Origin: Ramazzottius varieornatus
Taxonomy: Eukaryota > Animalia > Tardigrada
Length of the DNA stretch: 64,000 nucleotides
Assembly (NCBI GenBank): GCA_001949185.1
Contig: BDGG01000002.1
Coordinates: forward strand, 7,306,448-7,370,447
Reading direction: 5' to 3'
Shown here: positions 1-22,134 of the stretch, one piece after another
How the letters are laid out: every line of letters begins with the position of its first letter
Numbering within the stretch: position 1 is the first letter of the stretch
Program-made: the position numbers and the translations under genes
Notes under the pieces: model-generated
Told to the model about the DNA's origin: nothing
Databases searched by the model: none
Seen by the model: the letters and a program-made list of their open reading frames with translations, nothing else

Positions 1-1450
1 ACAGGGTAGTTCGACTATGGAACGTCAAGCAGCGTAAAGCTCTTCAGTCGTATTCCATCAAGGCTGATGCTCTTTGCGTAGCGTGGGCTCCTGACGGAAA
101 GACGTTCGCCGTCGGAGACAAAGATGACGTCCTCACGTTTTACGAGGTCGAGAAAGGACAGAAAGTGGATCGACAGTTCGGGTACGAAATCAACGAGTTC
201 GTGTTCCGCGAAAGCAACGGCAGTATCTACCTGTTCCTGACCACCGGAACCACCGCGGGACATGGCGGCAGGCTGGAGTACTTCGAATACGCCTTTCCCG
301 AACTGCGCCCAATGTAAGCAACAGGTGGAACATAGCTTTGCTTTTGAGCTGACGTTTGACTATGTGCTGCAGAAACAGCATTCCAGTTTCCGGTGTAACC
401 AGCACAGTGGCCAAGCTGAATTACACCGGAAGTGCGCTAGCTGTTGGAGGGATGGACGGTAACGTGACACTATGGGACATGAATGGAATGTTTCCCATGC
501 AAGAAGTCTCTCGGCAGAAGCAAGGCATACGCGGTATATCCTTCAGTCACGATAACCGTTTCATAGCCTGTGTGGCCGAGCATGAAAACTACATCGACGT
601 AGCGCTGGTCGAGACCGGCGAGAAAGTATGGAGTTTCCAGAACGAAGAGCGTGACGACGAAGAGCATACCTCACTCTGCTGCATCGCCTTCCATCCTACC
701 CAACTGTACCTCGCTTGTGCTTACGACCACAAGAAAAGCCACAAAGACGGATCGTTCGTGAGACTCTTTGGTGGAACTGGTCCATATGATGACAAGAAGA
801 AGGATGGAAGAGATTCGCGAGGTCGATCGAGGGAACGAGAGACCAAGGCCGTCAAAAAGCCACTTCCGGTCAAAGTCGAGAAGGATAAAGATGGGAAAGA
901 TAAAGAGAAAGTAAGATTCGAGTCAAAGTTTTCGTTTCTGAAACCTACGGCAGAGCAGCTAGCGGGACTGGAAGAAAGGAAAGCAGCGAAGGAAGCCAGG
1001 GATGCCAAAGCTGCGCAGATGGCGCAAGCTAGAGCGGCTGCTGCGGCTGCGAGATTACCGGTGAGTTTTTCTGAGCTCGAAAAGGAGGAAGTGGTAAGTT
1101 TTCTTGGTTGCTTGTAGGTGAAAGTGGCAACGAGGCTTGGTGCAGCAGTCACGGCCTCGCCAGTGCGTTCGGGGATCCGGGAGACGGCCAAGCCTCAACT
1201 TCCGGCACAGCCTTCGAGGGATTCGCCGAAGAACTCTCGGCCAGCAAGTCCGCGGAACAAGGACGTAAGTAGCGGAAGAAGAGAAGATGATCCGAAGGAA
1301 GGGTCGTCTAGGAGTTCGTCGACGAATACCAGAAAGCTGGAAGTGGAAGAGAATGACCGGAAGAGGATCCGGTCGAGCGCAAGAGAGGGAGATGGCAAAG
1401 ATTCAAAACAACAACCTGCTGCACCAAGAGGCGATAATCCACGAAGGTAG
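1..1450 (+). CDS. THOC3: THO complex subunit 3 (Tex1), WD40 protein; 5' part lies outside the window; long charged C-terminal extension
   Basis: Frame 3 from base 3 reads RVVRLWNVK...VAWAPDGKTFAVGDKDDVLTF...YEINEF. After an intron (~315-372) it continues ISFSHDNRFIA..ENYIDVALVETGEKVW..AFHPTQLYLACAYD..GSFVRLFG, matching THOC3 motifs (WSPDGQTIAVGNKDDVVTF, LSFSHDG, IDIAEVETGDKLW, GTVKLFG). Intron 1060-1117, stop at 1450. Confidence 0.88.
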
Positions 1451-1773
1451 TGTTTCATTCGTCTGCGAGTGATTCATCTGTCTTTTTAGAAAGGATGCTG
1501 TAAAATAAAATTCGACTTCGTCTCGAGTTGGCACCTCTCTCCGAGATAGTTTGTTATCTTCGTTCTTTACATATACTGTAGGTGTTGATCTCATACTTTT
1601 TACTGGCTCATACTTTTCGAAGCCAGTTCACGCTACCAGTTCTTACCTTCACGTGCACAACTATCAAATACACTGTGGTAGTGAATGAATCTCGCAGCTT
1701 TCTCATATAGTTACCGGAAAAATTGTTAGAAATCACAGATGAAACTAATAGTGCTAGACTGGGACGATTAGTT

Positions 1774-2638
1774 TCAGGGTCGCGGTAATTCGACTGAGGA
1801 ATTAAAATTCGTTCGGAAAAGCATAGGGCGGCGGTTCTTGATCTGAGATCTTCTCATACTTTTCAAGTGTGACCACAAGTCTTCCAGGAAACGCAGGGTC
1901 CAGGGAACACCGTTTCCGTTGGTCGCACGTGGCTCCACATGGACTTCAACATAATTCTCGACGACGTCGCCATCACGAATCAAGTTTTTCCAACGCGAAC
2001 CGACTGCGAAACAAAGACCGTGGAACTCGGTAGCGTAAACATTGCTATAGCAAAGTCAGTATCTTTTGCGCCACTAGCCCACTTCTATCCAAATATTTGA
2101 CCGTCCGTAGTTTTTCCATCTTTGATGTCCTCAAGCAGGCGCCCAGATCGATCGGGGAGTCGCATGGTTTACCAGGATAAGGCGCGTGACACCGTCAGAC
2201 GCTGGTATTGCAAGGAAGATGGCCGCCCATTTGAGGGATTGTACATCGCCGTAGTTGGCACAATGTAACCTGTCAAGCTCCTTCGGTGGACTCTTTCTAA
2301 TGAAGTCTTCCACAACAGCGACACTCTCGGCACGCTTCTGAATCTGTCTCAGCTCGGAAGCTCACGAGGTCGATACTCTGTAAGCAAACCCGGATATAAA
2401 AGATAGGATGAGAATTATCAGAAACGGCGTACTGTACAGCACAGAAAGTACCTGCTCAGTCGTGAAGCCTGACGAAGATTCAGATGGTTGAAAAGCTCGT
2501 CTCGAAGGTGACGTTGGATCAAAGGGAACACCTCTTGAGTTGTAAGCACGCTCTCCGCAATGGATTCCTCACACGTGTCGTTTTCAGTCGCTTTGCCGAG
2601 CTGTCATCGTCCGATGATGGTTCCTGTCTCAGTGACAT
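1774..2638 (-). pseudogene. Probable decayed F-box protein gene
   Basis: ATG at 2638 (MSLRQEPSSDDDSSAKRLK), then a frameshift into ..LRDELFNHLNLRQASRLS|RVSTS*ASELRQ. This is an F-box-like motif with TGA where Trp is expected (RVxxxW). A second frameshift near 2160; GT-AG introns retained. Confidence 0.45.
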
Positions 2639-3112
2639 TGTTGGGTGTGCACCGGAAAAAAAGAGAATCTTGACACTAGATTAAGTTGGGTTCTATCGCG
2701 AGCGAGCGAAAGCCGGAAGGCGTTGGAAATCGGGAAGAAATCCCAGCAAATGCAAATTAAATTTTTAAGAAATTGCAGGAGTGGAGTCCAGTAGCCAGAC
2801 TTCTCATATGACATCACCAAATATAACTCTTTTTGTGATCGTTAAGTGATGACAGCAAGTGATGTCATATAATGTTCACATTTGCAACTGCAGTTGGTTT
2901 TTAGTTTCTCGATCTTCAGTTTTCGGTTCCGAAAGATCCCATTCTCAGATCGCCGCTTTTGCTGATTATCGTACCTATCACAAGCGGCACATCACCGGGT
3001 GCTCCACAACAGTAGCGGTATCATTGCAGTAAGGAAGTTTCTTGAATTTTAGGTTGATTTGTTGAGTCTGACAAACGCGCCATTGTCCAGCGAATACGCT
3101 TTCCAAATTCCA

Positions 3113-3815
3113 ATGGATTCTACATCTGAGCAGTTGCCGTTTGTTATGTTGGATACCTCCTTCGGGAAGATAGTTGTGGAGCTGTACTGGGATCATGCAC
3201 CCAGGACTTGCAGGAACTTCTCCGAGTTAGCCGGCCGAGGCTACTATGACGGAGTATTATTTCATCGTATCATTCGAGATTTCGTAAGTAGCTGTTCTTT
3301 TCTTCTCATGTGTTAATTGTGAATCATACGAAGGTTCACCACTCTCTTGTTTTTCTCTCGTTTATGTAGGTAATACAAGGAGGTGATCCCACCGGAACAG
3401 GTAAGCTGGAATTGCCGTTGATGATTTTGTGCTGGGTGTGATCAAATATGACATGACACGACATAGCTCTCATTCCAAACAGGCTTCTAACTTCGCACGG
3501 TTTACAGGTCGCGGAGGTACATCCATCTACGGCAAGACTTTCGAGGATGAAATTCACCCTTCTCTGAAGCATGCAGGAGCAGGCATCCTTTCAATGGCCA
3601 ACGCTGGACCGAACTCAAACGGAAGCCAGTTTTTTATCACCCTCGCTCCCACTGCCCATCTCGATGGTAAACACGCTATATTTGGGCGCATCACTAGAGG
3701 TATGAAAGTTGTCGAACGGTTGTCCAAAGTCGAAACTGGAAAAGATGACAAGCCAGCTCATGATGTTAAGATCCTGAAAGCTTATCCTTTGGAAGAAATC
3801 CCTTCAAATTTATGA
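3113..3815 (+). CDS. PPIL1: Peptidyl-prolyl cis-trans isomerase-like 1 (spliceosomal cyclophilin), 3 exons (3113-3283, 3370-3400, 3508-3815)
   Basis: [31 protein letters not shown]|[10 protein letters not shown]|[56 protein letters not shown]; the YWxHAP and KAYP motifs are typical of PPIL1. Confidence 0.93.
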
Positions 3816-6519: not shown

Positions 6520-9500
6520 TTATGAAAGATCGTGAGAACTATTAGAAGGTTCTCGTTCAACACCGGTATCTTTACTATTGCTGAAACTGTTTCTCGCCAC
6601 ACTACTCGCGGAGCCTGAGGTCCTTCTCTCAAAACTCGATCCAACTCCCACCATTGTCCCCAAACTCTTTGTCGTCTTCGACAACCAGCTATTCTTACTC
6701 GCTTGATCGCCTTGACTTGCTAAGTTCAACTGGTGGAGTAATTCCTGCGTATAGCATTCCTTCTCAACCAACGCCAGCTTTGTGCGAGCTAACTCCAATT
6801 CCAACATCTTGATCTTTTCCTCATCAGGGTTCGTTTGACAGTTGGACTGTGCAGTGTCACCATCAGGAGGAAACTTGCATGCTTTACAAAGACCGTTCTG
6901 TACAGAATGGAGCTTAGCTGTCATGATCTCAAGGCGTTTCTCAAGCTGTAGGTTAATCTGCTTATACTGACTTTTCGATTCTTCTATCCTTCTTGTCTCA
7001 TTCTCCATGTTCCTACACAGCTCTTTCACCATACTGGCTTCGTCCCTCAGACGCTTCGTCTCGTCTTCCGCGTCGATCACCAGACAGTTCAACCTGGCTA
7101 TTTCTTTTTGTTGAAGTTCGTTCATGTCTTCGGCGTTGTCCAGTTCGCTTCTCAGCTGGATCTTCCCGTTGATCAGTTCGTGGGCCAGCTGGTCATTCTC
7201 ACGTTCCAGCCTCATCACTGTACCCATCAGCTCTCTTGTGTCTTTCTTGGCTCTTTCGAGTGGGTCTTCCGCGTTTCTTTCTTGCACTTGCGCGGCTTCG
7301 TACTGCGCCATCTTCTTCCGGCTAATCTTCTCGGTGACTGCTTGCTGTAGCAGCACGGAAACGAAGTCTTCATTCTTGTACCGTTTCGGCAAGGTTAAGC
7401 GGAAGAACCTCAGGATACCCTCGAAATCTAGACTGAGCAGGTCGTTCTTTGCAAGTCGAAGTAACGCTATCGCTACCTAAGAAAGGATCAAAGCCGTTTC
7501 GCACTGATGTTAAAGTCATCCACACAGCAAAAGCTCTTATCAGACCGGTCTTACCTGAAAAAGTACCGGGACGTTTTGACCGTCGCACAAAAACAGGTCG
7601 AAGACGCGGAAGACACAGAAGAGCGGAAACCTCGCGGTGAACAGAGTCAAAAACCTAAAGAAACATAACAGTGAGGAACGTCTGCAATTGTGTCGAGATT
7701 AAAAATTCCCTGGGTTAAGACATTGTGTACCATTGAGTGGCAAACATGTGGACCTCGACGCCGGTGTCTTGCAAGTGGAAATGTAAGTCCGGAATTTTCT
7801 CTTCTATCAAGCAATTCAGCTGATGAAACCGCACTCGCAAACCTACAAAAGACCAAGAAGCACCATAGTCCAATATCCACAAAATAACCGACTAATCTAG
7901 AAACAATCTACTCGTACCTTCAAAGTCGTTTCGCATCATTTCACGCACTCCGTAATTTTCCATCACCCGTACAAAAAGACAGAAAGCGTTCTCTTCCGGC
8001 ATCTGGAGCAATATAGTGGCAGCTATGAACGACAGGCTTTGCGAGTATCCCGTTTCCGGGTCGTATATGGAATACGCCTTTATGACACGGAATAACTGGT
8101 CTTGTCCTTCGCTGCCCGCTTCCTTAAAGAATTCATGAGCTGGAAACGTTCTACTGATGTCTTTCGTTATCTCACTTTCCCAGGGCGAATCTTGCACGCT
8201 CAGACTTTTGTACTTCTCTAACAGTTCGTCCGAGTTGAAACAACCCGCCAAGTTCTGCCACACTTCACACCGTAACGACTGGGGAATACCGTCGCGTCTG
8301 ATGATACTGTTCAGGTACTTCGGTCGAACAGCCAAGTTCGTTCGCCACTTGGTCAGTATTTCAGACCACACTTTGAGCTCTCCTTCCTCACACTCGCGGC
8401 TAACTCGGCCAGAGCCACTCAGCATCTGTTCGTCGCTATCGGAATCGGCGGTTTCGTCTTCTGAGGAAGAGGCGTCAAGAGCGGGGAGGACGCTAGGAAA
8501 CCTGCCTTCGCGCTGAGACTGACTTTCCAAGTTGATGACTTTGTAGAAACCTTTGTTAGACTCTTTCGTCGCTTTCCAAAACAGCCTGTTCGAAAACGAG
8601 AAAAACGAGTTTATCATCAGTTAATGAACTCTTCGAATTACGGCACGGCCCAGTCCAGGTCGACGGTCAAGGCCGTGCCCACACTTCCGGTGTACGTTTA
8701 GTTGACTGGGGCACTTTTTTCCTGTTACTTTATTGCGTATATGTGCAAACAGCTGGTTCTTTTACCGAAGGAAGAAGGTCTCTTGGAGTTGTCGGCGTCC
8801 CGGCATCCAGAACTTCTCCGACGGTGGGAAGATTCTTGCTTTCGAGCGAATAATAAACGTCAGCGTTTCTTCGAAGCCTGCCACTGTAATGTCCACTACG
8901 ATCGTCATGTAGCTTCGGTGTTCTCCGGGCGTTTCCGTGTTGAGCAGGAGGAACTTTTCTTCTCGAGGATCAAATCGGCAGAAGACGTTGAACTGCTTGC
9001 CGTTGTTCGACCAACTTTCCCCTGAAAGACGCTGTAGATCGGACCTGCTGATGTTCTTCCCCGCTGCCAGCCAGACTCCCGAGCATTTCTCCAGCGACAG
9101 ATGGGGATTCTCTGGACCGACTTGTAGAACATGGACGACGATCTCCTTCGGCAGATTGGCGCGTAACTAAAGAGAGAGCGGAATGTTATTCTAACTGGCT
9201 GATACATCATTCACCTGCATACTCACGCCCTAGTACGAAAACACCGAACGATGGATGCAGGTGAGAAAGATTATTCAAACTGCAGAACCCTGCATCCACC
9301 TGCATACTCATAAATCGCCAAAGCGTACCGGTACGACGTATGCAGGTTATTAATATGTCAACAGACTGACTTACCTTGAAGCAGTCTCTTCCTTCTCGCG
9401 GACAAGCAGCATACGCAGCTCCTTTGGAATCTTCTTCCTTAATTTCCACGCTGACATCGAACACGAAAGCTAACTCGCCTTGCGATAACCTACTCGTCAC

Positions 9501-10133
9501 GGGTTTGCGGAATGCACTGGCAAAGCACATCATGATGTTCGTCACCTGTTCCGCACTTTGGCACCGGAATGCATGACACAGGAATACCGCTTCTTCGTTG
9601 CTTCCATGTCCGAATGTGAAAGCAAAGCAATTGGAAGTTGTGTCAGTAGTCTTGCCTCCTTTGGCGCAGAAGATAATACGGAATACGGGATACTTGGCCA
9701 CTTCGTCCTCTGTCCCCTGCTCGTATAACACAACAGTACCTTGAGGAATTCTTGGCACTAGCAGATCCACAAGCACGGAAGTCTTTTCCTCTCTGCTTAA
9801 CGTGGCTAGGTACTTCATGATTTCCGCCTCTGCTCGAGGGGATCGCATGCTGGCTGCGCCCAAGTACACAACATTAGGGAACAGGACGTGATCCTCCGTT
9901 TCCGACGGCAGCGATATGCGATCGTCTTCCGGAGGTGTTGGTAGAGTGGCTGATGAGTTTCTGTTGTCGGATCCATTGCTGTTAGTGGAGCGTAGGTCCA
10001 GATTATCATCGGAAGCACCTACTGTCTTATCTGCATCTTCGAGCCACTGAGGCTTGGCTGGACTTGAGGTGCGATCCATCGCTCCTGATTGACTTGCCTC
10101 CTTCCCTGGGTCACCTGTCTCTCGCGCTGCCAT
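6520..10133 (-). CDS. RABGAP1: Rab GTPase-activating protein 1-like (PTB/PID + TBC + coiled coil)
   Basis: N-terminal PTB (VVYLGAASMRSPRAEAEI, FRIIFCAKG, FLCHAFRC). TBC domain (GIPQSLRCEVWQ, ITKDISRTFPAHEFFKE, YDPETGYSQSLSFIAA, MFATQW|FLTLFTARFPL). C-terminal coiled coil (RLERENDQLAHELI, LELELARTKLALVEKEC). Confidence 0.92.
9213..9347. repeat. Family B: two 50-bp ACCTGCATAC-N30-GTATGCAGGT units in a RABGAP1 intron
   Basis: Units at 9213-9262 and 9298-9347. Confidence 0.7.
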
Positions 10134-13341: not shown

Positions 13342-15468
13342 CTATGCCTCGTCCCTGCTAATTCGAGTGTAGTTTCTGGAAGCTACTCTGTCTCCAGAGA
13401 TATAAGTAGCCTTGTATCCGTCCGGGGTGAATGTGCCTTCAACAGAAACCAGTTACTTTCATATTAAATATTTTGAACAGCCCAAGAGTTAAGCGGGAGA
13501 CGGTCAAGAATCGTACCAACAATATCGAGCTTTCGCGGCCCGTCCTGTAGGCCTTCCCATACAGTCCGAAGAACTGGGTGGACATCTTCCAGAAACAGGT
13601 GCGTATACTGTGAACATGCAAATTTGGTAGAATCCGCGAGGGAAAGCGCACTACCTCAAGCAGTGGTATTAACATACGAACCTCGACATCACGTCCTTCT
13701 ACAGACTGGGTCATTTTCTGACCCAGGACAAAAGGAAAGTCGATGGACGAGTTATCTCCTCCTTTGAAGTTTCTTTGTACGTAGGTATGGTCTGGAGTTT
13801 CGGCGATTTCAACCGTGATATCCTCTGCCAAGTTAGCCAGTTCTACCAAAATTAAAACTTGGCATTTAAAACAAATTCGACGAGATCGTTCTCCTAAGTG
13901 GCGCACGCTTCTGGCCAAAACTACCGACGACTTGCGCCACTTGGGGGAACGATCTGGTAGAGCGTTATTGCCGGGCTCCCATTTAGATGCCGAAAGTAAT
14001 CGTGCTGCAGGAAAAATAAAAACTTTTCGATCTTACTGATATCTTTCGCGAAGGCTGTGAACTGGTCTGTGCTAGGAGTACTTTTGAATTTCGCCAAAAC
14101 AGTGGAAGGAAGCATCCGGCGGTAGAATCTTTTAATCTCGGTGCCGCCGCTTTTGTAAACCTGACGAAAGAAAGGGAGTAATAGTATGAGGAGTTTCGGA
14201 TAACACCGGAAATACTGTACGCACCACCACCACGCCGGTCTGGTTAAAGGTCGCCACGGAACTGATGTTTTTATCGGTCCCCACTACGTTAGTGGTTTGA
14301 TAAAGAACCGTTCTTGGGCCATGCGGGTACTCGTACTTGTAAGTAATGGACAGATTGCCGGAACTGGCGTTCTCAGTGCGACCGTCCAGATGGAAAGGAT
14401 ACACAGTAGAGGTCCCGGACTGCAGGGTGACACGGTTGTAGTGAGTGTTGTTACCGTCCCGGTAAAACTGAATTTTCGCGATGTCGTCCACATGATGACA
14501 AAACTCTGCAGCATCCACTATAACCAACAAAGTTTTCGACGGTACGTTTGACGAAGCCACATTACCATTTGCTTCTTCTTCGGGAGCCACAAGTTCCGGA
14601 ACGGGCTCGTACGTTCCGTCAACGAAAATCGGGAGGATTCTTTTGTAATACCTAAAGGCTTCTCTTCCTGCTGACCTATAAGTCTAAAATATCAAACGTC
14701 AGATTTCGCTCGCAATACTGCAGTTCCTGAAAACGGTAGCAGTCCGGGAGTTAATTTGGTTCGTTGGCGCAGTTCGATGTACATACTTACCTTAGTGAGA
14801 CTCTTTCCGTCGAATACGCAGGTTACGGTGAAAGATCCTCTTTCTGTAACAAACTCGGCGACCAAAGTCGTAGTATTCGAGGTGGCGTCGTGGTCAGTGA
14901 TTTTGTACACGTACTGGATCGGTGAAAAAGATTACTCGATCGAAGTCCACAATGATTAGTACATAACACTGGCTAATGCGTTCTTCCGTACCTCCACAGG
15001 GACACTTCGGAAGGTTATGTTTCCCTTCTCGTTGAGCTTGAACAGGAACCCGAAGGAGTATACTGAATCTACCACGTACCTCACAGCATATTCATCCTCG
15101 AGTTTCCCGATCCACATCCGCGTATTCGACTGCCAACTGACACTATCCGGCAAAGCTACCAACATGGCAAGAAGTTCGATCGATCAGTCGATGAAAGGAG
15201 GCGTGTTTGATAGTTCTTACGAAAAAGAGAAGATAGTTCCGCGAAATTCCTTTCTCTTGAGGGGTCGTTGACGTAAGTACCGTAAACCGTTTCCGGGAGC
15301 TCAGTAAAATTACTTTCCGCTTGTAGAGCGACGAGCTGCTCAAAGATTCCTGTGAACACTGCAACAACCTTTCACCATCGATAAAAGTAACAGTGGCGGA
15401 ACAAACTTTTTCAAAAGTTGTAATTTATTCATACCGACGAATGCAATCATCCAGCTGCGAACGGCCAT
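13342..15468 (-). CDS. Secreted protein with three tandem SAHS/FABP-like beta-barrel domains; 10 exons, 446 aa
   Basis: Exons 15468-15435, 15358-15221, 15155-14992, 14913-14791, 14683-14566, 14517-14225, 14160-14037, 13842-13682, 13607-13517, 13436-13342. All introns are GT-AG and the exons give one open frame of 1341 nt. Signal peptide MAVRSWMIAFVVFTGIFEQLVALQA. Domain ends TYRSAGREAFRYYKR, VYKSGGTEIKRFYRR and TYISGDRVASRNYTR resemble the SAHS C-terminal motif (TYKVGDVTAKRWYKK). FKLNEKG matches SAHS FKLNEEG. Confidence 0.82.
13883..13955. repeat. Palindromic element family A, copy in an intron of the SAHS-like gene
   Basis: AGATCGTTCTCCTAAGTGGCGCA-loop-TGCGCCACTTGGGGGAACGATCT. Confidence 0.85.
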
Positions 15469-17623: not shown

Positions 17624-20600
17624 CTACTCTGATGGATGGGTGACAGTCATACGAGGAGCAATATTCATACTAATGAGTTCTTGGAACAGCAGCTTACATG
17701 CATAAGGCATTCTCACAGTCGACACCGATCCCGGTTTCCGGCAGGATGAGCACTCTTCTTTCCACGTGAACAGTCCACACTGGTCACACACCAGTACCTC
17801 ACATTCATCACTAGCCAACATTAGTCGCTCATTCAGCAAGGAAGACACACCGTGAGCAATCATACAATCCCTCTCCATTTCCCCCATGCGAAGACCTCCG
17901 TCGTGAGCGCGACCTTCCGTGGGCTGACGAGTTAGCGTCTGTCTCGGACCTTTCGCTCGCGCGTGGATCTTATCAATGACCATGTGCTTCAGTCTCTGAT
18001 AGAAGAATGGGCCTATAAAAATATACGCTTCTAGAATCTTCCCTGTCACACCGTCTATCATGATCTCTTTTCCCGACTTGTCATATCCGTTGTCCTCCAG
18101 AATCTTCATCATCTCTTCCAGCCGGTCTTCTCCAAACGCCGATCCGTCAAAGACTTTTCCCAGGAGTGCGCCGGCTTTGCTACCCATCAGCTCGCGAAGC
18201 AGGCCTACCGTCATACGACTAGGGATACCGTGAGGATTCATAATGACATCTGGTCGGATACCGTCCATTGTGAACGGCATGTCTTCTTCCGGAACGATCA
18301 GCCCGCAGACACCTTTCTGACCATGTCGACTGCTGAACTTATCACCTGAAAAATAAGAGACAAAAGCGAAGTTTTTCTTCTAGACAATGGTCTTACTTTT
18401 ATCGGAAATGGAAGGCCGGTAAAGAAAGCGTAGTGCAAGATTGTCATCTTAAGCGGCGCACCCTTCTGCCAATAACAATTGAAAAGTGCGCAACTTGAGA
18501 TGAAGATCTTGCACGTTTCGTCTGTCTTTAATACGGTTACACACTAAGTCTTACCTATTTCGGGTATACGTGTCTGTGAAGTTCGAACTTTGATCAGTTG
18601 TTCTCTTTCAAACTGCGAGATCATGATTTTATCCACATGACAGGGATTCACTTCCTGGAACCTCAACGGGTCCGGTTTATCCACCACCAGTGGTCGACTC
18701 ATGACACTTCCGGGTGACTGCACCGTCAAGTCCGTCGTCTGTTGAGCGCCCACCGGCACGTACTTATTCACCAGAATATCCCCCTTCTCCACGTTATACC
18801 CCACCCCGATCATCCCATCTGTGTCCAGTTTCTCTTCTTGCGGATACACCAGCCCCGTCATGGGGTTGACTCTCGCCGGGAACAGCGTCTCTTTCTCCCC
18901 AGCTGAGTTCGCTTTGACACTCGTCTGCAACTTCCTGTACACCGTAGCTCGTTGATAACCTCGTTCCAACGACGCCTTATTCAAGATCAGTGCATCTTCG
19001 ATATCGTAGGACGTGTACGACATCATGGCCACGATCGCGTTCTGACCAGCGGGTAGCTGGTCAAAGCTTGTGATACCAAAGCTCTTCGACTGTACTAATG
19101 GTCTCTGAGGGTTCCACGACACTTGTAAAACTGTATCAATACGATTAGTCTGGTTCGTGGCAATGGCGCCTATGGCTTGTTTGCCCATAGCGCATTGGTA
19201 TGTGTTACGGGGACTCTGGTTGTGATGAGGGAAGGGAATGGTGCCTGCTACAACACCGAGGATAGAGAACGGCGCGATCTCCATGTGGGTGGTGTCGGGT
19301 GTGAGTTCGCTTTCGTCGAGTGCTATGAGACTATCGTTCAGCTCGTTCACGTCTAGGTACTCGATGAAACCGACTTGGACCAGATCGTCGAAGCCGACCA
19401 AGTTGTCGCGGACTGCGTCGACGTGCTTCTGTTCTATCGGAAGCTGTCCGTGTTCCACTACGAAGTACGGACGCGTCATTCGACCGCCGTCTGTTGAGAA
19501 TGTCACCGTTCGATGCAAGTCGCTGCAAAAAGAGAGGGTAAAAAACAGAATATTATGGATATCAAAACTCAGGCAGCCAGGTTAAATTAGATATTGATAC
19601 CTGACAGCAGCGGAGATAAACTTGTCGATCTTGCCAATCCTCCTCGCTTGTCTGACAAGTTTGGCGCTTTCCAGAGCGTCTTTCGTATACCCAAAGATAC
19701 TGCCATTGACGAAGACCGTATAGACTTCTCCAGGTGGGTACGTCCACGGCGTCGTACAGACTTCGTGCGCCGCTTTGGTTGTGACGCAAGTCAGGAGCTT
19801 TCGTACTTGGTCTTCGGGAGATTCTTCAGTGAGGTCGCACATCAGCGCCAAGTTCTTCGTCAGCCCACAACCCTCTCCTTCCGGCGTGTCGGACGGGCAG
19901 ACGATACCGTACTGACTGGCCTGGATGGAACGCGGTCCGCTGACTTTGCGACTCTTCTCAAACTGACTTTGAAGCCGAGACATCATGCCCACTGCGGAAA
20001 CGTAGGATAGTCGGACCAGGACTTGCGCTACCCCAACCCTGTTCACCTTGAACCGACGAATGTTGAGGTTGCCCGTGTCCAGGAAGTAGTTGAAACCGTG
20101 CGTCACCTGGAAAAAATACGGATAAAAATCCGCAATCTTCAAAATTAGCAATCCTAAACTCACAAACTTTACAAACATGTTAACGAGCCGAAGGGAGCAT
20201 TCACCTTGTCTTGACGAATGTGAGCAGTCGGATCAAACTGGCTTGTTCTTGCGCGAGCTTTGAGGTGCTTATCCGCGCGAGTTTTCAGTTCGGTATTTAG
20301 CGACTTAATCACATCTTCAAAGACCAGCGATAAAATATTCCCGGCTAACTGTAAGCGCTTCACGCCGAAGTGGTCTCTGTCATCCAGCATTTTCGGGTCT
20401 TTCTCCACGAGGATGCACCTTCGGATCATGTAACTCAAGAAGGCTGCTTTATCATCGAAGTTACCGTTCTTGACCGGGACATGACTGAGGAAGGAGCCTA
20501 GCAAGATCTGTGTAACTTCCGCAGTCTTTGGCCGTTTATATCCACCCCAACTTGTGATACCGGTCTTCAGGCGAGCAGCGAGATACAGCAAAGCTTCTTC

Positions 20601-21609
20601 TTTCTTACTTATGTTAAGGCACAGGAACTCGTCGACGGACAAGGTGAATTTCTCTAACGTCGAGTGCTCCCTTCCAATCCAACCTAGTGCCATGTCGAGG
20701 TAGTGGATGCCCATCGCCGCGAATATTACCAGGACGGAAATGTCCTCTTTGAACATGCTGAAACGAACGTAGTAGCATCCGTGCTTCTTTGCGACAGTTG
20801 TCCGAGTCTTGTGGTCGTGCGAGAAACTGACAACGAAACATGTGAGCTGCAATGGAGAAACACCCGTTGGTCCAAGACAAAACAAGGCAAAGCACATGAA
20901 TCGGACACCCAGAGACTCAAAGCCCATGACGTTCACCGCAGTGACGTATACAGGTGCAGCCTAGGGGTGGCCGACTTCCTAGGGGTGACCAAGGACCAGT
21001 CAACTTCCTTGCTGGACATAAAAGAATAAGGTTAACTGGTACCTCTTTCTTCGTGTTAAACTCGCAAACTGTCCGATTCTTCATCATCTGTTCTTGCATC
21101 AGCACGACTTTCTCCGTTCCTCTCGCAATGAAGTATCCTCCCGGATCAAGTGGACACTCTTTCGACCTGACGAGCTCTTCGTCCGACCTTCCAGACAGCG
21201 TGCACAGCTGACTTCTCAGCATCACAGGCATCCGTCCGATCATCACATCCGTCTTCCGCTGCACCGAACTGTTTTGCATGTATCGCATGTTGACCAGGAT
21301 GGGTGCGGAATAAGTCAGATTACGCAGCCGGCATTCATTCGGTGTAGTCATGTGCGTCTGTCCCAGTCCATCGTCCACTTGTGGAGCTCCTATTCGGATG
21401 CTCTCGTACTCTAGGAACCAGCTGTTATCTGCATCACTGGTGACGCGCTTGTTGGCTTCGAGGATTTTGGGCATCTCCACGTTAATGAAGTTGTTGTACG
21501 AGTCAATGTGCAGCTTTTCCAGGCCATGATTCCGCAGGAAGTCCTTCACTATCACCCACGTAGCCTTGATCTTCTTCGGCTTCAGCTGCTGGCAATCCTC
21601 CATACCCAT
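17624..21609 (-). CDS. POLR3B: RNA polymerase III second-largest subunit (RPC2)
   Basis: [119 protein letters not shown]; the motifs are Pol III-type. Confidence 0.93.
18433..18514. repeat. Palindromic element family A, copy in a POLR3B intron
   Basis: GTGCAAGATTGTCATCTTAAGCGGCGCAC-loop-GTGCGCAACTTGAGATGAAGATCTTGCAC. Confidence 0.8.
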
Positions 21610-22134
21610 ACACAACAATTTCGCTAAGTTGCTGGGTCGGTTAGTAAAGTATCATCATTCATCAGTTCCTCAACATGATGCGAACTGCTGATGAAAGATT
21701 CGACGAAAATAAAATTAAAGTCAAATGGATAACGCCGTCGTGACGATAGGAAGCTTGCGTTACGGACCATTTGCGGCTCGACCTGGCACCCCCACGTTTC
21801 TAAATTCTAATATGCGCAGCAGTGTGAATTGATTCGTTGATCACTAGACCTTTGGAACTGTTTGCGTGGTCGTACGGTGTTTTTGCTTGGGATCGAGCAA
21901 CCAACTTGCCATCTCAAGCAGACCGAAAATCGTGCTCCGCTTCTTCTCGTTCTTCTCAGAGGTTGATCGCCGCCACCGGGCTGGTCTCTGCTCCTTGTAA
22001 ACGGCTCCGTATAGTCGGAAGGGAAACATATCGCTGATTTCGTTGAGCTTGTATGGACTAGACTTGTGGGTTACGCAAAGTTAGGGACATCAACGTGCCG
22101 ACCTGTTTGTTTGGCTACCGGAAGTCGAATCATC

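What the first reader, a model, noticed from the sequence alone, without database searches (positions are those of the whole stretch)
13342..15468. A secreted triple-barrel (three-domain) SAHS-like protein hidden across 10 small exons
Seen: splicing ten exons at GT-AG sites gives one 446-aa open frame, a signal peptide followed by three ~135-aa units. D1 is TVYGTYVNDPSRERNFAELSSLFPLP...FLFKLNEKGNITFRSVPVEYVYK...VFDGKSLTKTYRSAGREAFRYYKR. D2 is FVDGTYEP...KIQFYRDGNNTHYNRV...PFHLDG...ITYKYE...ATFNQTGVVVVYKSGGTEIKRFYRR. D3 is TVLAKFKSTPSTDQFTAFAKDI...FPFVLGQKMTQSVEGRDVEYTH...GTFTPDGYKATYISGDRVASRNYTR. Known: tardigrade Secretory Abundant Heat-Soluble (SAHS) proteins are ~170-aa single-domain FABP-like beta-barrels linked to desiccation tolerance. 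As I recall it, RvSAHS1 has GKWESTDRIENFDAFISALGLP, FKLNEEG..IKYKY and GDELEKTYKVGDVTAKRWYKK, which align in order with each unit. Inference: this is a divergent multivalent 'poly-SAHS', possibly an extracellular lipid carrier, membrane or cuticle stabiliser, or a polyprotein. The characterised SAHS proteins I know are single-domain.
Basis: partly seen in the sequence, partly recalled or inferred. Interest (0 to 1): 0.88.

Follow-up and report, generated by a model that had tools for sequence, protein, structure and literature searches.

The report
Secreted three-barrel FABP/SAHS-like tardigrade protein
This tardigrade gene really does encode one secreted protein made of three fatty-acid-binding-type barrels joined head to tail, most similar to the SAHS proteins linked to drying tolerance; no paper I could search describes this layout, and its function is untested.

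Summary
Ten minus-strand exons (15468 to 13342), all with GT-AG introns, give one 446-aa frame. GenBank already holds it as hypothetical protein RvY_05846 of Ramazzottius varieornatus (442 aa; it uses an acceptor 12 nt further on). Hypsibius exemplaris has a colinear ortholog, BV898_01512, at 43% identity.

- **Repeat:** the three ~135-aa units align end to end (hhalign E 3e-6 to 2e-9).
- **Fold:** all three are FABP-type barrels. For unit 3 the best solved match is SAHS1 (Z 13.8, 131 of 138 residues). ESM Atlas models put units 1 and 2 on FABP/CRABP clusters (TM 0.74-0.82).
- **Sequence:** SAHS1 or SAHS4 is the top PDB hit in three searches (best E 8e-4). Pfam finds nothing.
- **Gene structure:** seven of eight intra-unit introns match the genome's own four-exon FABP gene in position and phase, so this is a triplicated FABP-type gene. 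The barrel junctions lie inside exons.
- **Protein evidence:** glycoproteomics found the ortholog carrying complex N-glycans, so it is made and passes the secretory pathway. That study lists it as not desiccation-induced.

Lipid carriage, cleavage into single barrels and any drying role are untested. The scan had already flagged a four-unit paralog 20 kb upstream. New variant of a known kind.

The parts
15435..15468 (-). Exon 1: ATG and the first 11 codons of the signal peptide, ending in phase 1
   Evidence: GT donor at 15434
15318..15468 (-). Signal peptide, residues 1-25 (spans intron 1); likely cleavage after A-L-Q-A
   Evidence: The strongest hydrophobic stretch of the protein is at residues 5-25 and there is no other one. 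The ortholog has the same layout and carries N-glycans. The cleavage site is inferred; no predictor was run.
15221..15358 (-). Exon 2: end of the signal peptide, then strand A and the first helix of barrel 1; ends at the phase-1 intron
14992..15155 (-). Exon 3: barrel 1 middle, including F-K-L-N-E and the N-I-T sequon
   Evidence: the matching sequon is glycosylated in the ortholog
14791..14913 (-). Exon 4: barrel 1, later strands
14566..14683 (-). Exon 5: last strands of barrel 1 (R-Y-Y-K-R) and, in the same exon, the start of barrel 2 (I-L-P...G-T-Y)
   Evidence: the junction lies inside an exon
14225..14517 (-). Exon 6: most of barrel 2 in one exon; the annotated record starts it at 14505 instead
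   Evidence: returned P0001 at E 2e-57
14037..14160 (-). Exon 7: last strands of barrel 2 (R-F-Y-R-R) and the start of barrel 3 (M-L-P...A-K-F)
13682..13842 (-). Exon 8: barrel 3 middle
13517..13607 (-). Exon 9: barrel 3, later strands; ends at a phase-1 intron 10 alignment columns upstream of the usual FABP site
13342..13436 (-). Exon 10: last strands of barrel 3 (R-N-Y-T-R), a short tail and the TAG stop
14639..15311 (-). Barrel 1 (residues 28-168 of the 446-aa model; contains introns)
   Evidence: The two-ortholog profile hits SAHS1 at E 8e-4 over 117 of 138 residues. The Atlas model aligns to FABP clusters at TM 0.79-0.82. VIA gives Z 8.2 to a fly FABP on a weak model.
14116..14638 (-). 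Barrel 2 (residues 169-305)
   Evidence: hhalign to barrel 1 gives 95% probability, E 3e-8. The Atlas model aligns to a CRABP2-family cluster at TM 0.74/0.71.
13363..14115 (-). Barrel 3 (residues 306-440)
   Evidence: The ortholog model gives Z 13.8, rmsd 2.9, 131 residues aligned to SAHS1 5xn9. Foldseek gives E 7e-6, TM 0.75. The window's own model gives Z 9.2 to SAHS1 and SAHS4.
14630..14653 (-). Junction 1: R-Y-Y-K-R-I-L-P
14107..14130 (-). Junction 2: R-F-Y-R-R-M-L-P

Best explanation
The locus is one gene of Ramazzottius varieornatus (RvY_05846). It encodes a secreted, N-glycosylated protein of about 47 kDa before glycans. After the signal peptide come three fatty-acid-binding-protein (FABP) type beta-barrels joined head to tail with no added linker.

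The gene arose by triplication of a four-exon FABP-type gene. The last exon of one copy fused to the first exon of the next, and this happened before Ramazzottius and Hypsibius separated. Among solved structures its barrels are nearest to the tardigrade SAHS proteins.

Each barrel keeps the Arg-x-Tyr pair in its last strand, which in FABPs holds the carboxylate of the bound lipid. I therefore infer that the intact three-barrel chain works outside cells as a carrier or buffer for fatty acids or similar carboxylate lipids, with up to three cargo sites per molecule.

Shown here: the gene structure, the repeat, the fold, the kinship, and secretory-pathway passage of the ortholog. Inferred only: lipid binding, that the chain stays intact, and where it acts.
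For: - **Gene model:** ten GT-AG exons give one 446-aa frame. The same protein is on public record.
- **Ortholog:** colinear three-unit protein at 43% identity.
- **Repeat:** units are mutually homologous end to end.
- **Fold, unit 3:** in the ortholog model it has one strand, two helices, then nine strands, at pLDDT 60-85. It matches SAHS1 at Z 13.8 over 131 of 138 residues, and 283 chains reach Z 8 or more; all 50 rows shown are FABP-family proteins.
- **Fold, units 1 and 2:** the ESM Atlas model aligns to FABP and CRABP clusters at TM 0.74-0.82.
- **Sequence kinship:** PDB sequence searches put SAHS1 or SAHS4 first three times, best E 8e-4.
- **Introns:** seven of eight intra-unit introns share alignment position (five the same column, two within four columns) and phase with the genome's own FABP gene. 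R-x-Y aligns in all six units and in that FABP.
- **Junctions:** both lie inside exons.
- **Secretion:** there is one N-terminal hydrophobic segment, no other, and ten sequons. Ortholog glycopeptides from units 1 and 2 carry HexNAc4Hex3Fuc2-3 at sequons that are conserved here (PMC12167791).
Against: - No lipid-binding, localisation or expression data exist for this protein.
- Pfam's FABP models do not reach threshold on any exon or on the whole protein.
- The AlphaFold models are weak outside unit 3 (mean pLDDT 39 and 51), so units 1 and 2 rest on the Atlas model and on homology to each other.
- A published analysis of SAHS cavities found the inward-facing residues poorly conserved and suggested no specific ligand (PMC11127935). 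The same could hold here.
- Dibasic residues at both junctions leave cleavage into single barrels open.
- I could not examine RNA reads.
Confidence: 0.6

Rival explanations
1. Polyprotein: the three-barrel chain is a precursor. A proprotein convertase cuts it after the dibasic K-R and R-R at the two junctions, releasing single SAHS-like barrels. This would resemble how nematode polyprotein lipid-binding allergens are made.
For: Both junctions carry [KR]-R right at the domain boundary, and this is conserved in the ortholog (R-Y-Y-R-R, R-F-Y-R-R) and at all three junctions of the upstream paralog. The protein passes the secretory pathway, where such enzymes act.
Against: The same R-x-Y-[KR]-[KR] ending occurs at the free C-termini of single-domain SAHS1 and SAHS4 and of the genome's cytosolic FABP. 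The basic pair is therefore an inherited feature of the last strand and need not be a processing signal. Position P4 is Y or F, not the Arg of the classic furin site (direct reading of the sequence, plus general knowledge of furin specificity). No linker separates the barrels. The third unit ends R-N-Y-T-R, which is not dibasic.
Confidence: 0.17
2. SAHS-type protectant: the barrels carry no specific ligand. The protein acts like SAHS proteins, as an abundant heat-soluble extracellular shield for membranes and matrix during drying, and three barrels simply raise valency.
For: The nearest solved relatives by sequence and fold are SAHS1 and SAHS4. It is secreted and glycosylated, as SAHS proteins are reported to be. 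So far it is found only in tardigrades: four hits among 1.84 billion representatives, and only two of those are real.
Against: The ortholog is listed among non-desiccation-inducible glycoproteins, although R. varieornatus is known to express many tolerance genes constitutively. Abundance and heat solubility are unknown. The R-x-Y pair is kept in all six units of the two orthologs over 43%-identity divergence, which suggests selection on a ligand site.
Confidence: 0.2
3. Annotation artefact: three neighbouring single-barrel genes have been wrongly chained into one model.
For: Tandem arrays of single-domain SAHS genes are known in this genome (literature).
Against: The end of one barrel and the start of the next are encoded in the same exon, twice, with no stop, start codon, signal peptide or intergenic DNA between them. 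An independent annotation gives the same chain. The ortholog in another genus has the same three-unit chain.
Confidence: 0.03

Closest known systems
SAHS proteins of eutardigrades (RvSAHS1, PDB 5xn9/5xna; RvSAHS4, PDB 5z4g)
   Same: Same organism group, signal peptide, N-glycosylation and FABP-type barrel. They are the best solved match for unit 3 (Z 13.8, TM 0.75) and the top PDB sequence hit for units 1 and 3. Shared motifs appear in order: N-F...L-P, F-K-L-N-E, and T-Y...R-x-Y-K-[KR].
   Different: SAHS proteins are single barrels of about 170 aa, whereas this protein has three in one chain. Identity is only 16-27% and E is 8e-4 at best. Heat solubility, abundance and a place inside the SAHS clade were not shown. 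The ortholog is reported as not desiccation-induced.
Cytosolic FABP / intracellular lipid-binding protein family (Pfam PF00061, PF14651), including this genome's own FABP at L002
   Same: Ten-strand barrel with a helix-turn-helix lid, G-x-aromatic at strand A, and R-x-Y in the last strand. The three introns sit at the same positions and phases.
   Different: FABPs are cytosolic, single-domain and unglycosylated. The Pfam models do not reach threshold here.
Secreted nematode FABPs (As-p18, PDB 6i8x; C. elegans LBP-3, PDB 9dxi)
   Same: FABP barrels sent out of the cell by a signal peptide. As-p18 scores within 1 Z of the best match (Z 13.0).
   Different: They are single-domain. No special sequence kinship was seen.
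Nematode polyprotein lipid-binding allergens, and insect polycalins (multi-lipocalin proteins)
   Same: Several lipid-binding units in one secreted chain (my own knowledge; polycalin papers are listed).
   Different: The folds differ: the nematode proteins are helical and polycalins use eight-strand lipocalin domains. These are analogies of design, not homologs.

Membership tests
FABP / intracellular lipid-binding protein superfamily | Ten-strand antiparallel barrel with a helix-turn-helix between strands A and B | tested here: met
   In the ortholog model, unit 3 has one strand, two helices, then nine strands. It gives Z 13.8 to SAHS1 and 12-13 to many FABPs over about 125-131 residues. Units 1 and 2 align to FABP/CRABP clusters at TM 0.74-0.82 in the Atlas model.
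FABP / intracellular lipid-binding protein superfamily | Match to Pfam PF00061 or PF14651 above the curated cut-off | tested here: not met
   No such hit at E up to 10, either for the exons or for P0001 and P0004.
FABP / intracellular lipid-binding protein superfamily | Arg-x-Tyr in the last strand (the carboxylate-binding pair of FABP3/4-type proteins) | tested here: met
   R-Y-Y, R-F-Y and R-N-Y align with R-T-Y of the genome's FABP in all six units. That they bind a ligand is inference.
FABP / intracellular lipid-binding protein superfamily | Four-exon gene with three introns at fixed positions | tested here: met
   Seven of eight intra-unit introns share alignment position (five the same column, two within four columns) and phase with the L002 FABP gene. 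Unit 2 lacks the middle intron, and unit 3's last intron is shifted by 10 columns.
FABP / intracellular lipid-binding protein superfamily | Single-domain cytosolic protein of about 130-140 aa | tested here: not met
   Signal peptide plus three domains, 446 aa.
SAHS (secretory abundant heat-soluble) family | Tardigrade protein with an N-terminal signal peptide | tested here: met
   Hydrophobic N-terminus. The ortholog carries complex N-glycans. The only real hits among 1.84 billion representatives are two tardigrade proteins.
SAHS (secretory abundant heat-soluble) family | Significant sequence similarity to known SAHS proteins, or placement in the SAHS clade | tested here: inconclusive
   SAHS1 or SAHS4 was the top PDB hit in three searches, but at E 8e-4, 0.35 and 0.47. 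No phylogeny with SAHS and FABP sequences was made.
SAHS (secretory abundant heat-soluble) family | Single barrel of about 170 aa | tested here: not met
   Three barrels in one chain.
SAHS (secretory abundant heat-soluble) family | Abundant and soluble after boiling | not testable with these tools
   This needs proteomics of the heat-soluble fraction.
Convertase-processed lipid-binding polyprotein | Units separated by R-x-[KR]-R cleavage sites and found as unit-size products | tested here: inconclusive
   [KR]-R is present at both junctions, but P4 is Y or F, and the same ending occurs in single-domain relatives. The products were not observable.

The most novel reading that the evidence does not exclude
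Tardigrades have a small, previously undescribed family of secreted multi-barrel FABP/SAHS-like glycoproteins: this three-barrel gene and a four-barrel neighbour. In this reading they are precursors cut at the conserved dibasic junctions into single barrels. That would be a beta-barrel counterpart of the nematode lipid-binding polyproteins and a second route to SAHS-like extracellular proteins.
Probability: 0.17. Interest if true: 0.75.

Novelty: new variant of a known kind. Interest (0 to 1): 0.55.

Why it matters
SAHS proteins are one of the few tardigrade-specific families tied to drying tolerance. Their link to FABPs, and the purpose of their cavity, are still debated. This gene is a conserved, expressed relative in which three barrels are fused, each keeping the lipid-carboxylate pair.

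It gives a natural test case for whether these extracellular barrels carry lipids. It is also an intermediate between the FABP and SAHS families, since its gene structure still matches the FABP gene. And it adds multi-barrel members that family surveys by Pfam or BLAST would miss, because Pfam finds nothing in it.

No paper in the searchable library describes a multi-domain SAHS or a tandem-FABP protein. Both orthologs are filed as hypothetical proteins.

Tried and rejected
- **Exon-by-exon Pfam and PDB sequence searches** gave only noise.
- **Word-indexed protein searches** with exon 6, P0001 and the two-sequence profile found nothing beyond the two orthologs. Length and word limits apply, so these blanks say little.
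- **Two of the four hits in the representative search** (P0002, a bacterial Ig-repeat protein, and P0003, a simple repeat) are compositional noise.
- **Own-genome searches** with exons 3, 6 and 8 found only the gene itself. The profile added only the upstream paralog. PF00061 found one FABP and one lipocalin, but no SAHS genes.
- **Loci named in earlier scan notes as SAHS-like** (L019-L021) gave only weak profile hits. I could not turn them into gene models cheaply, so no SAHS intron map or phylogeny was made.
- **The first AlphaFold model** was poor, at pLDDT 39. Its beta-propeller hits at TM 0.1 are meaningless.
- **UniProt's automatic name** for the record, 'Glycosyl hydrolase family 38 C-terminal domain-containing protein', has no Pfam support. 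I reject it.
- **DNA repeats:** there are none inside the gene, so the triplication is old.
- **Supplement searches for expression values** were blank.
- **The joined model:** the 446-aa model was never sent to a search tool. It was built only inside scripts from the window file, for the frame check, a local tblastn against fetched loci, and the intron map. Full-length searches used the database record P0001.
Full report
**Observation.** The gene lies on the minus strand. From the ATG at 15468 I chained ten exons to the TAG at 13344-13342. All nine introns are GT-AG and 48-194 nt long. The joined frame is 1341 nt, or 446 aa, with no internal stop.

**Handling of the joined model.** As required, I sent only single exons, by reference, to the search tools. 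The joined model was built only inside scripts from the window file, for the frame check, a local tblastn against loci already fetched, and the intron map. It was never handed to a search tool.

**What record it is.** The genome has 55.8 Mb in 200 contigs, and the window is G000:C2:7306448-7370447. A full HMMER scan of 1.84 billion representative proteins with exon 6 (97 aa) returned four hits.
- The first, P0001 (442 aa, 99% identical), is GAU93997.1, 'hypothetical protein RvY_05846 [Ramazzottius varieornatus]'. It equals my model except that exon 6 starts 12 nt later, at 14505, which removes four residues.
- The fourth, P0004 (464 aa), is OQV24448.1, 'hypothetical protein BV898_01512 [Hypsibius exemplaris]'.
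- The other two are compositional noise.

P0001 and P0004 align colinearly at 43% identity with the same signal peptide and three units. The gene is therefore real, already annotated but unnamed, and conserved across two genera.

**Internal repeat.** I cut both orthologs at the R-x-Y-x-R endings and compared two-sequence profiles of the units. Unit 1 against unit 2 gives 95% probability (E 3e-8). Unit 1 against unit 3 gives 96% (E 1.6e-9). Unit 2 against unit 3 gives 89% (E 2.6e-6). Each comparison covers about 131 columns from first to last residue. There is no DNA-level repeat, so the triplication is old.

**Fold.** AlphaFold2 with only two sequences gave a poor model of P0001, at mean pLDDT 39. 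Even so, the only Foldseek hits with probability 1.00 were CRABP2, SAHS1 and SAHS4. In the VIA second look, all 50 rows shown were FABP-family chains: unit 3 scored Z 9.2 to both SAHS structures, and unit 1 scored Z 8.2 to a fly FABP.

The ortholog model was better, at mean pLDDT 51, with unit 3 at 60-85. Unit 3 there has one strand, two helices, then nine strands.
- Foldseek ranks SAHS1 first (E 6.6e-6, TM 0.75, rmsd 2.9), with 148 hits at E <= 0.001.
- VIA gives Z 13.8 to SAHS1 with 131 of 138 residues aligned, 13.2 to Sm14, 13.0 to the secreted nematode FABP As-p18 and 12.9 to SAHS4.
- 283 chains reach Z 8 or more. Rows within one Z unit are ties, so SAHS1 is among the best matches, not uniquely best.

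The ESM Atlas holds P0001 with its own model (pLDDT 0.74, pTM 0.67). In that model, unit 1 aligns to cytosolic FABP clusters at TM 0.79-0.82 over 129 residues. Unit 2 aligns to a CRABP2-family cluster at TM 0.74/0.71 over 124 residues. All three units are therefore FABP-type barrels. Unit 3 is tested best; units 1 and 2 rest on a third-party model plus their homology to unit 3.

**Sequence kinship.** Pfam finds nothing, neither exon by exon nor on the whole proteins. Against all PDB sequences the results were:
- P0001 alone puts SAHS4 first (E 0.35, unit 3).
- P0004 alone puts SAHS1 first (E 0.47, unit 1).
- The two-ortholog profile hits SAHS1 at E 8.3e-4 over 117 of its 138 residues.
- No FABP or CRABP chain appears below E 10 in any of these searches.

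A six-unit profile also aligns with this genome's own cytosolic FABP over 121 columns (hhalign E 1.2e-4, probability 55%). The barrels therefore belong to the FABP superfamily, and SAHS proteins are the nearest known relatives. But the similarity is too weak (16-27% identity) to place the gene inside the SAHS clade without a phylogeny, which I could not build.

**Gene structure.** This is independent evidence. The genome's canonical FABP gene (L002, 136 aa) has four exons, with introns of phase 1, 0 and 0. I aligned the three units with it and compared intron positions.
- The first intron is phase 1 in all three units and falls at or within four columns of the FABP intron.
- The second is phase 0 in the identical column in units 1 and 3, and is absent in unit 2.
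- The third is phase 0 in the identical column in units 1 and 2. In unit 3 it sits ten columns upstream, in phase 1.

So seven of eight intra-unit introns match. The two barrel junctions have no intron: exon 5 and exon 7 each encode the end of one barrel and the start of the next. This is what a head-to-tail triplication of a four-exon FABP-type gene with fused terminal exons would leave. It also rules out a mis-chaining of three separate genes.

**Secretion and protein-level evidence.** The only strongly hydrophobic segment is at residues 5-25. There is no C-terminal anchor and no KDEL-type ending. The protein has ten N-x-S/T sequons and only two cysteines, and the mature chain is about 47 kDa with pI 5.6.

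[quoted passage not shown] It gives an IUPred score of 0.04, meaning an ordered protein, and places it in the non-desiccation-inducible group (PMC12167791). The supplement shows two glycopeptides, one in unit 1 and one in unit 2, with HexNAc4Hex3Fuc3 and HexNAc4Hex3Fuc2. Both sequons are conserved in the window's protein: N103 N-I-T, and N215 N-N-T in the 446-aa numbering. The ortholog is thus made as a protein and matures through the Golgi.

**Junction motif.** The pattern R-x-[YF]-[KR]-[KR]-x-[LI]-P occurs only five times in the six-frame translations of the 64-kb window plus 10 kb upstream. Two are in this gene and three are in the upstream paralog. An earlier scan note read this as a convertase site.

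I find that the first part of the motif is the FABP family's own last strand. SAHS1 ends R-W-Y-K-K, SAHS4 likewise, and the cytosolic FABP ends R-T-Y-K-K-I. The Arg and Tyr are the lipid-carboxylate ligands of FABP3/4-type proteins (established knowledge; PMC11127935 notes the conserved basic residue in SAHS1). The L-P that follows belongs to the N-terminal lead-in of the next barrel, and it also precedes barrel 1. There is therefore no linker. Cleavage at the dibasic pair remains possible, but the motif does not require it.

**Family and context.** Profile and tblastn searches of the whole genome find only one relative, 20 kb upstream at L007:~997-3434 on the minus strand. It has three such junctions and a terminal R-T-Y-R-R, which makes four units. 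The flanking genes are unrelated: an RNA polymerase Rpb2-type subunit at 17.6-21.6 kb and a PTB plus RabGAP-TBC gene at 7.9-10.1 kb.

**Literature.** Neither accession appears in any searchable paper except the glycoproteome table. SAHS surveys treat only single-domain proteins. No paper in the library uses phrases for tandem or multiple FABP domains. The library is incomplete, so this is absence within it only.

**Limits.**
- Function (lipid carriage, an intact chain, any role in drying) is inference from fold, conserved residues and secretion.

Noticed in passing
L007:997-3434 (minus strand; G000:C2:7297496-7299933, about 20 kb before the gene and outside the window): A paralogous gene with three R-x-[YF]-R-R-x-[LI]-P junction exons and a terminal R-T-Y-R-R, which makes four FABP-like units. 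Its third unit is mostly one large exon, like unit 2 here. I did not resolve its start or its full exon chain.
   Followed up: partly
window 14505-14517 (minus strand): Two AG acceptors 12 nt apart for exon 6. GenBank's model uses 14505 (442 aa, a 60-nt intron). This may be alternative splicing; it is unresolved without reads.
   Followed up: partly
window 13517-13607 and 14225-14517 (minus strand): Intron changes since the triplication. Unit 2 has lost the middle FABP intron. Unit 3's last intron sits 10 alignment columns upstream, in phase 1 instead of phase 0.
   Followed up: yes
L002:1370-2628 (G000:C7, plus strand): The genome's canonical cytosolic FABP gene: four GT-AG exons, 136 aa, no signal peptide, ending R-T-Y-K-K-I. 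I used it as the reference for intron positions.
   Followed up: yes
L003:1474-2073 (G000:C2, minus strand): A secreted lipocalin-type gene, apolipoprotein D-like by its motifs. It was picked up weakly by PF00061 and is not related to the finding.
   Followed up: no
window 17624-21618 (minus strand): Exons of an RNA polymerase second-largest-subunit gene (Rpb2 domains 4-7, E down to 1e-51).
   Followed up: partly
window 7892-10133 (minus strand): Exons of a gene with a PTB/PID domain and a RabGAP-TBC domain.
   Followed up: partly
P0001 (the public record of the window's protein): UniRef names it 'Glycosyl hydrolase family 38 C-terminal domain-containing protein'. Pfam gives no such match at E up to 10, so the automatic name looks wrong.
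   Followed up: yes
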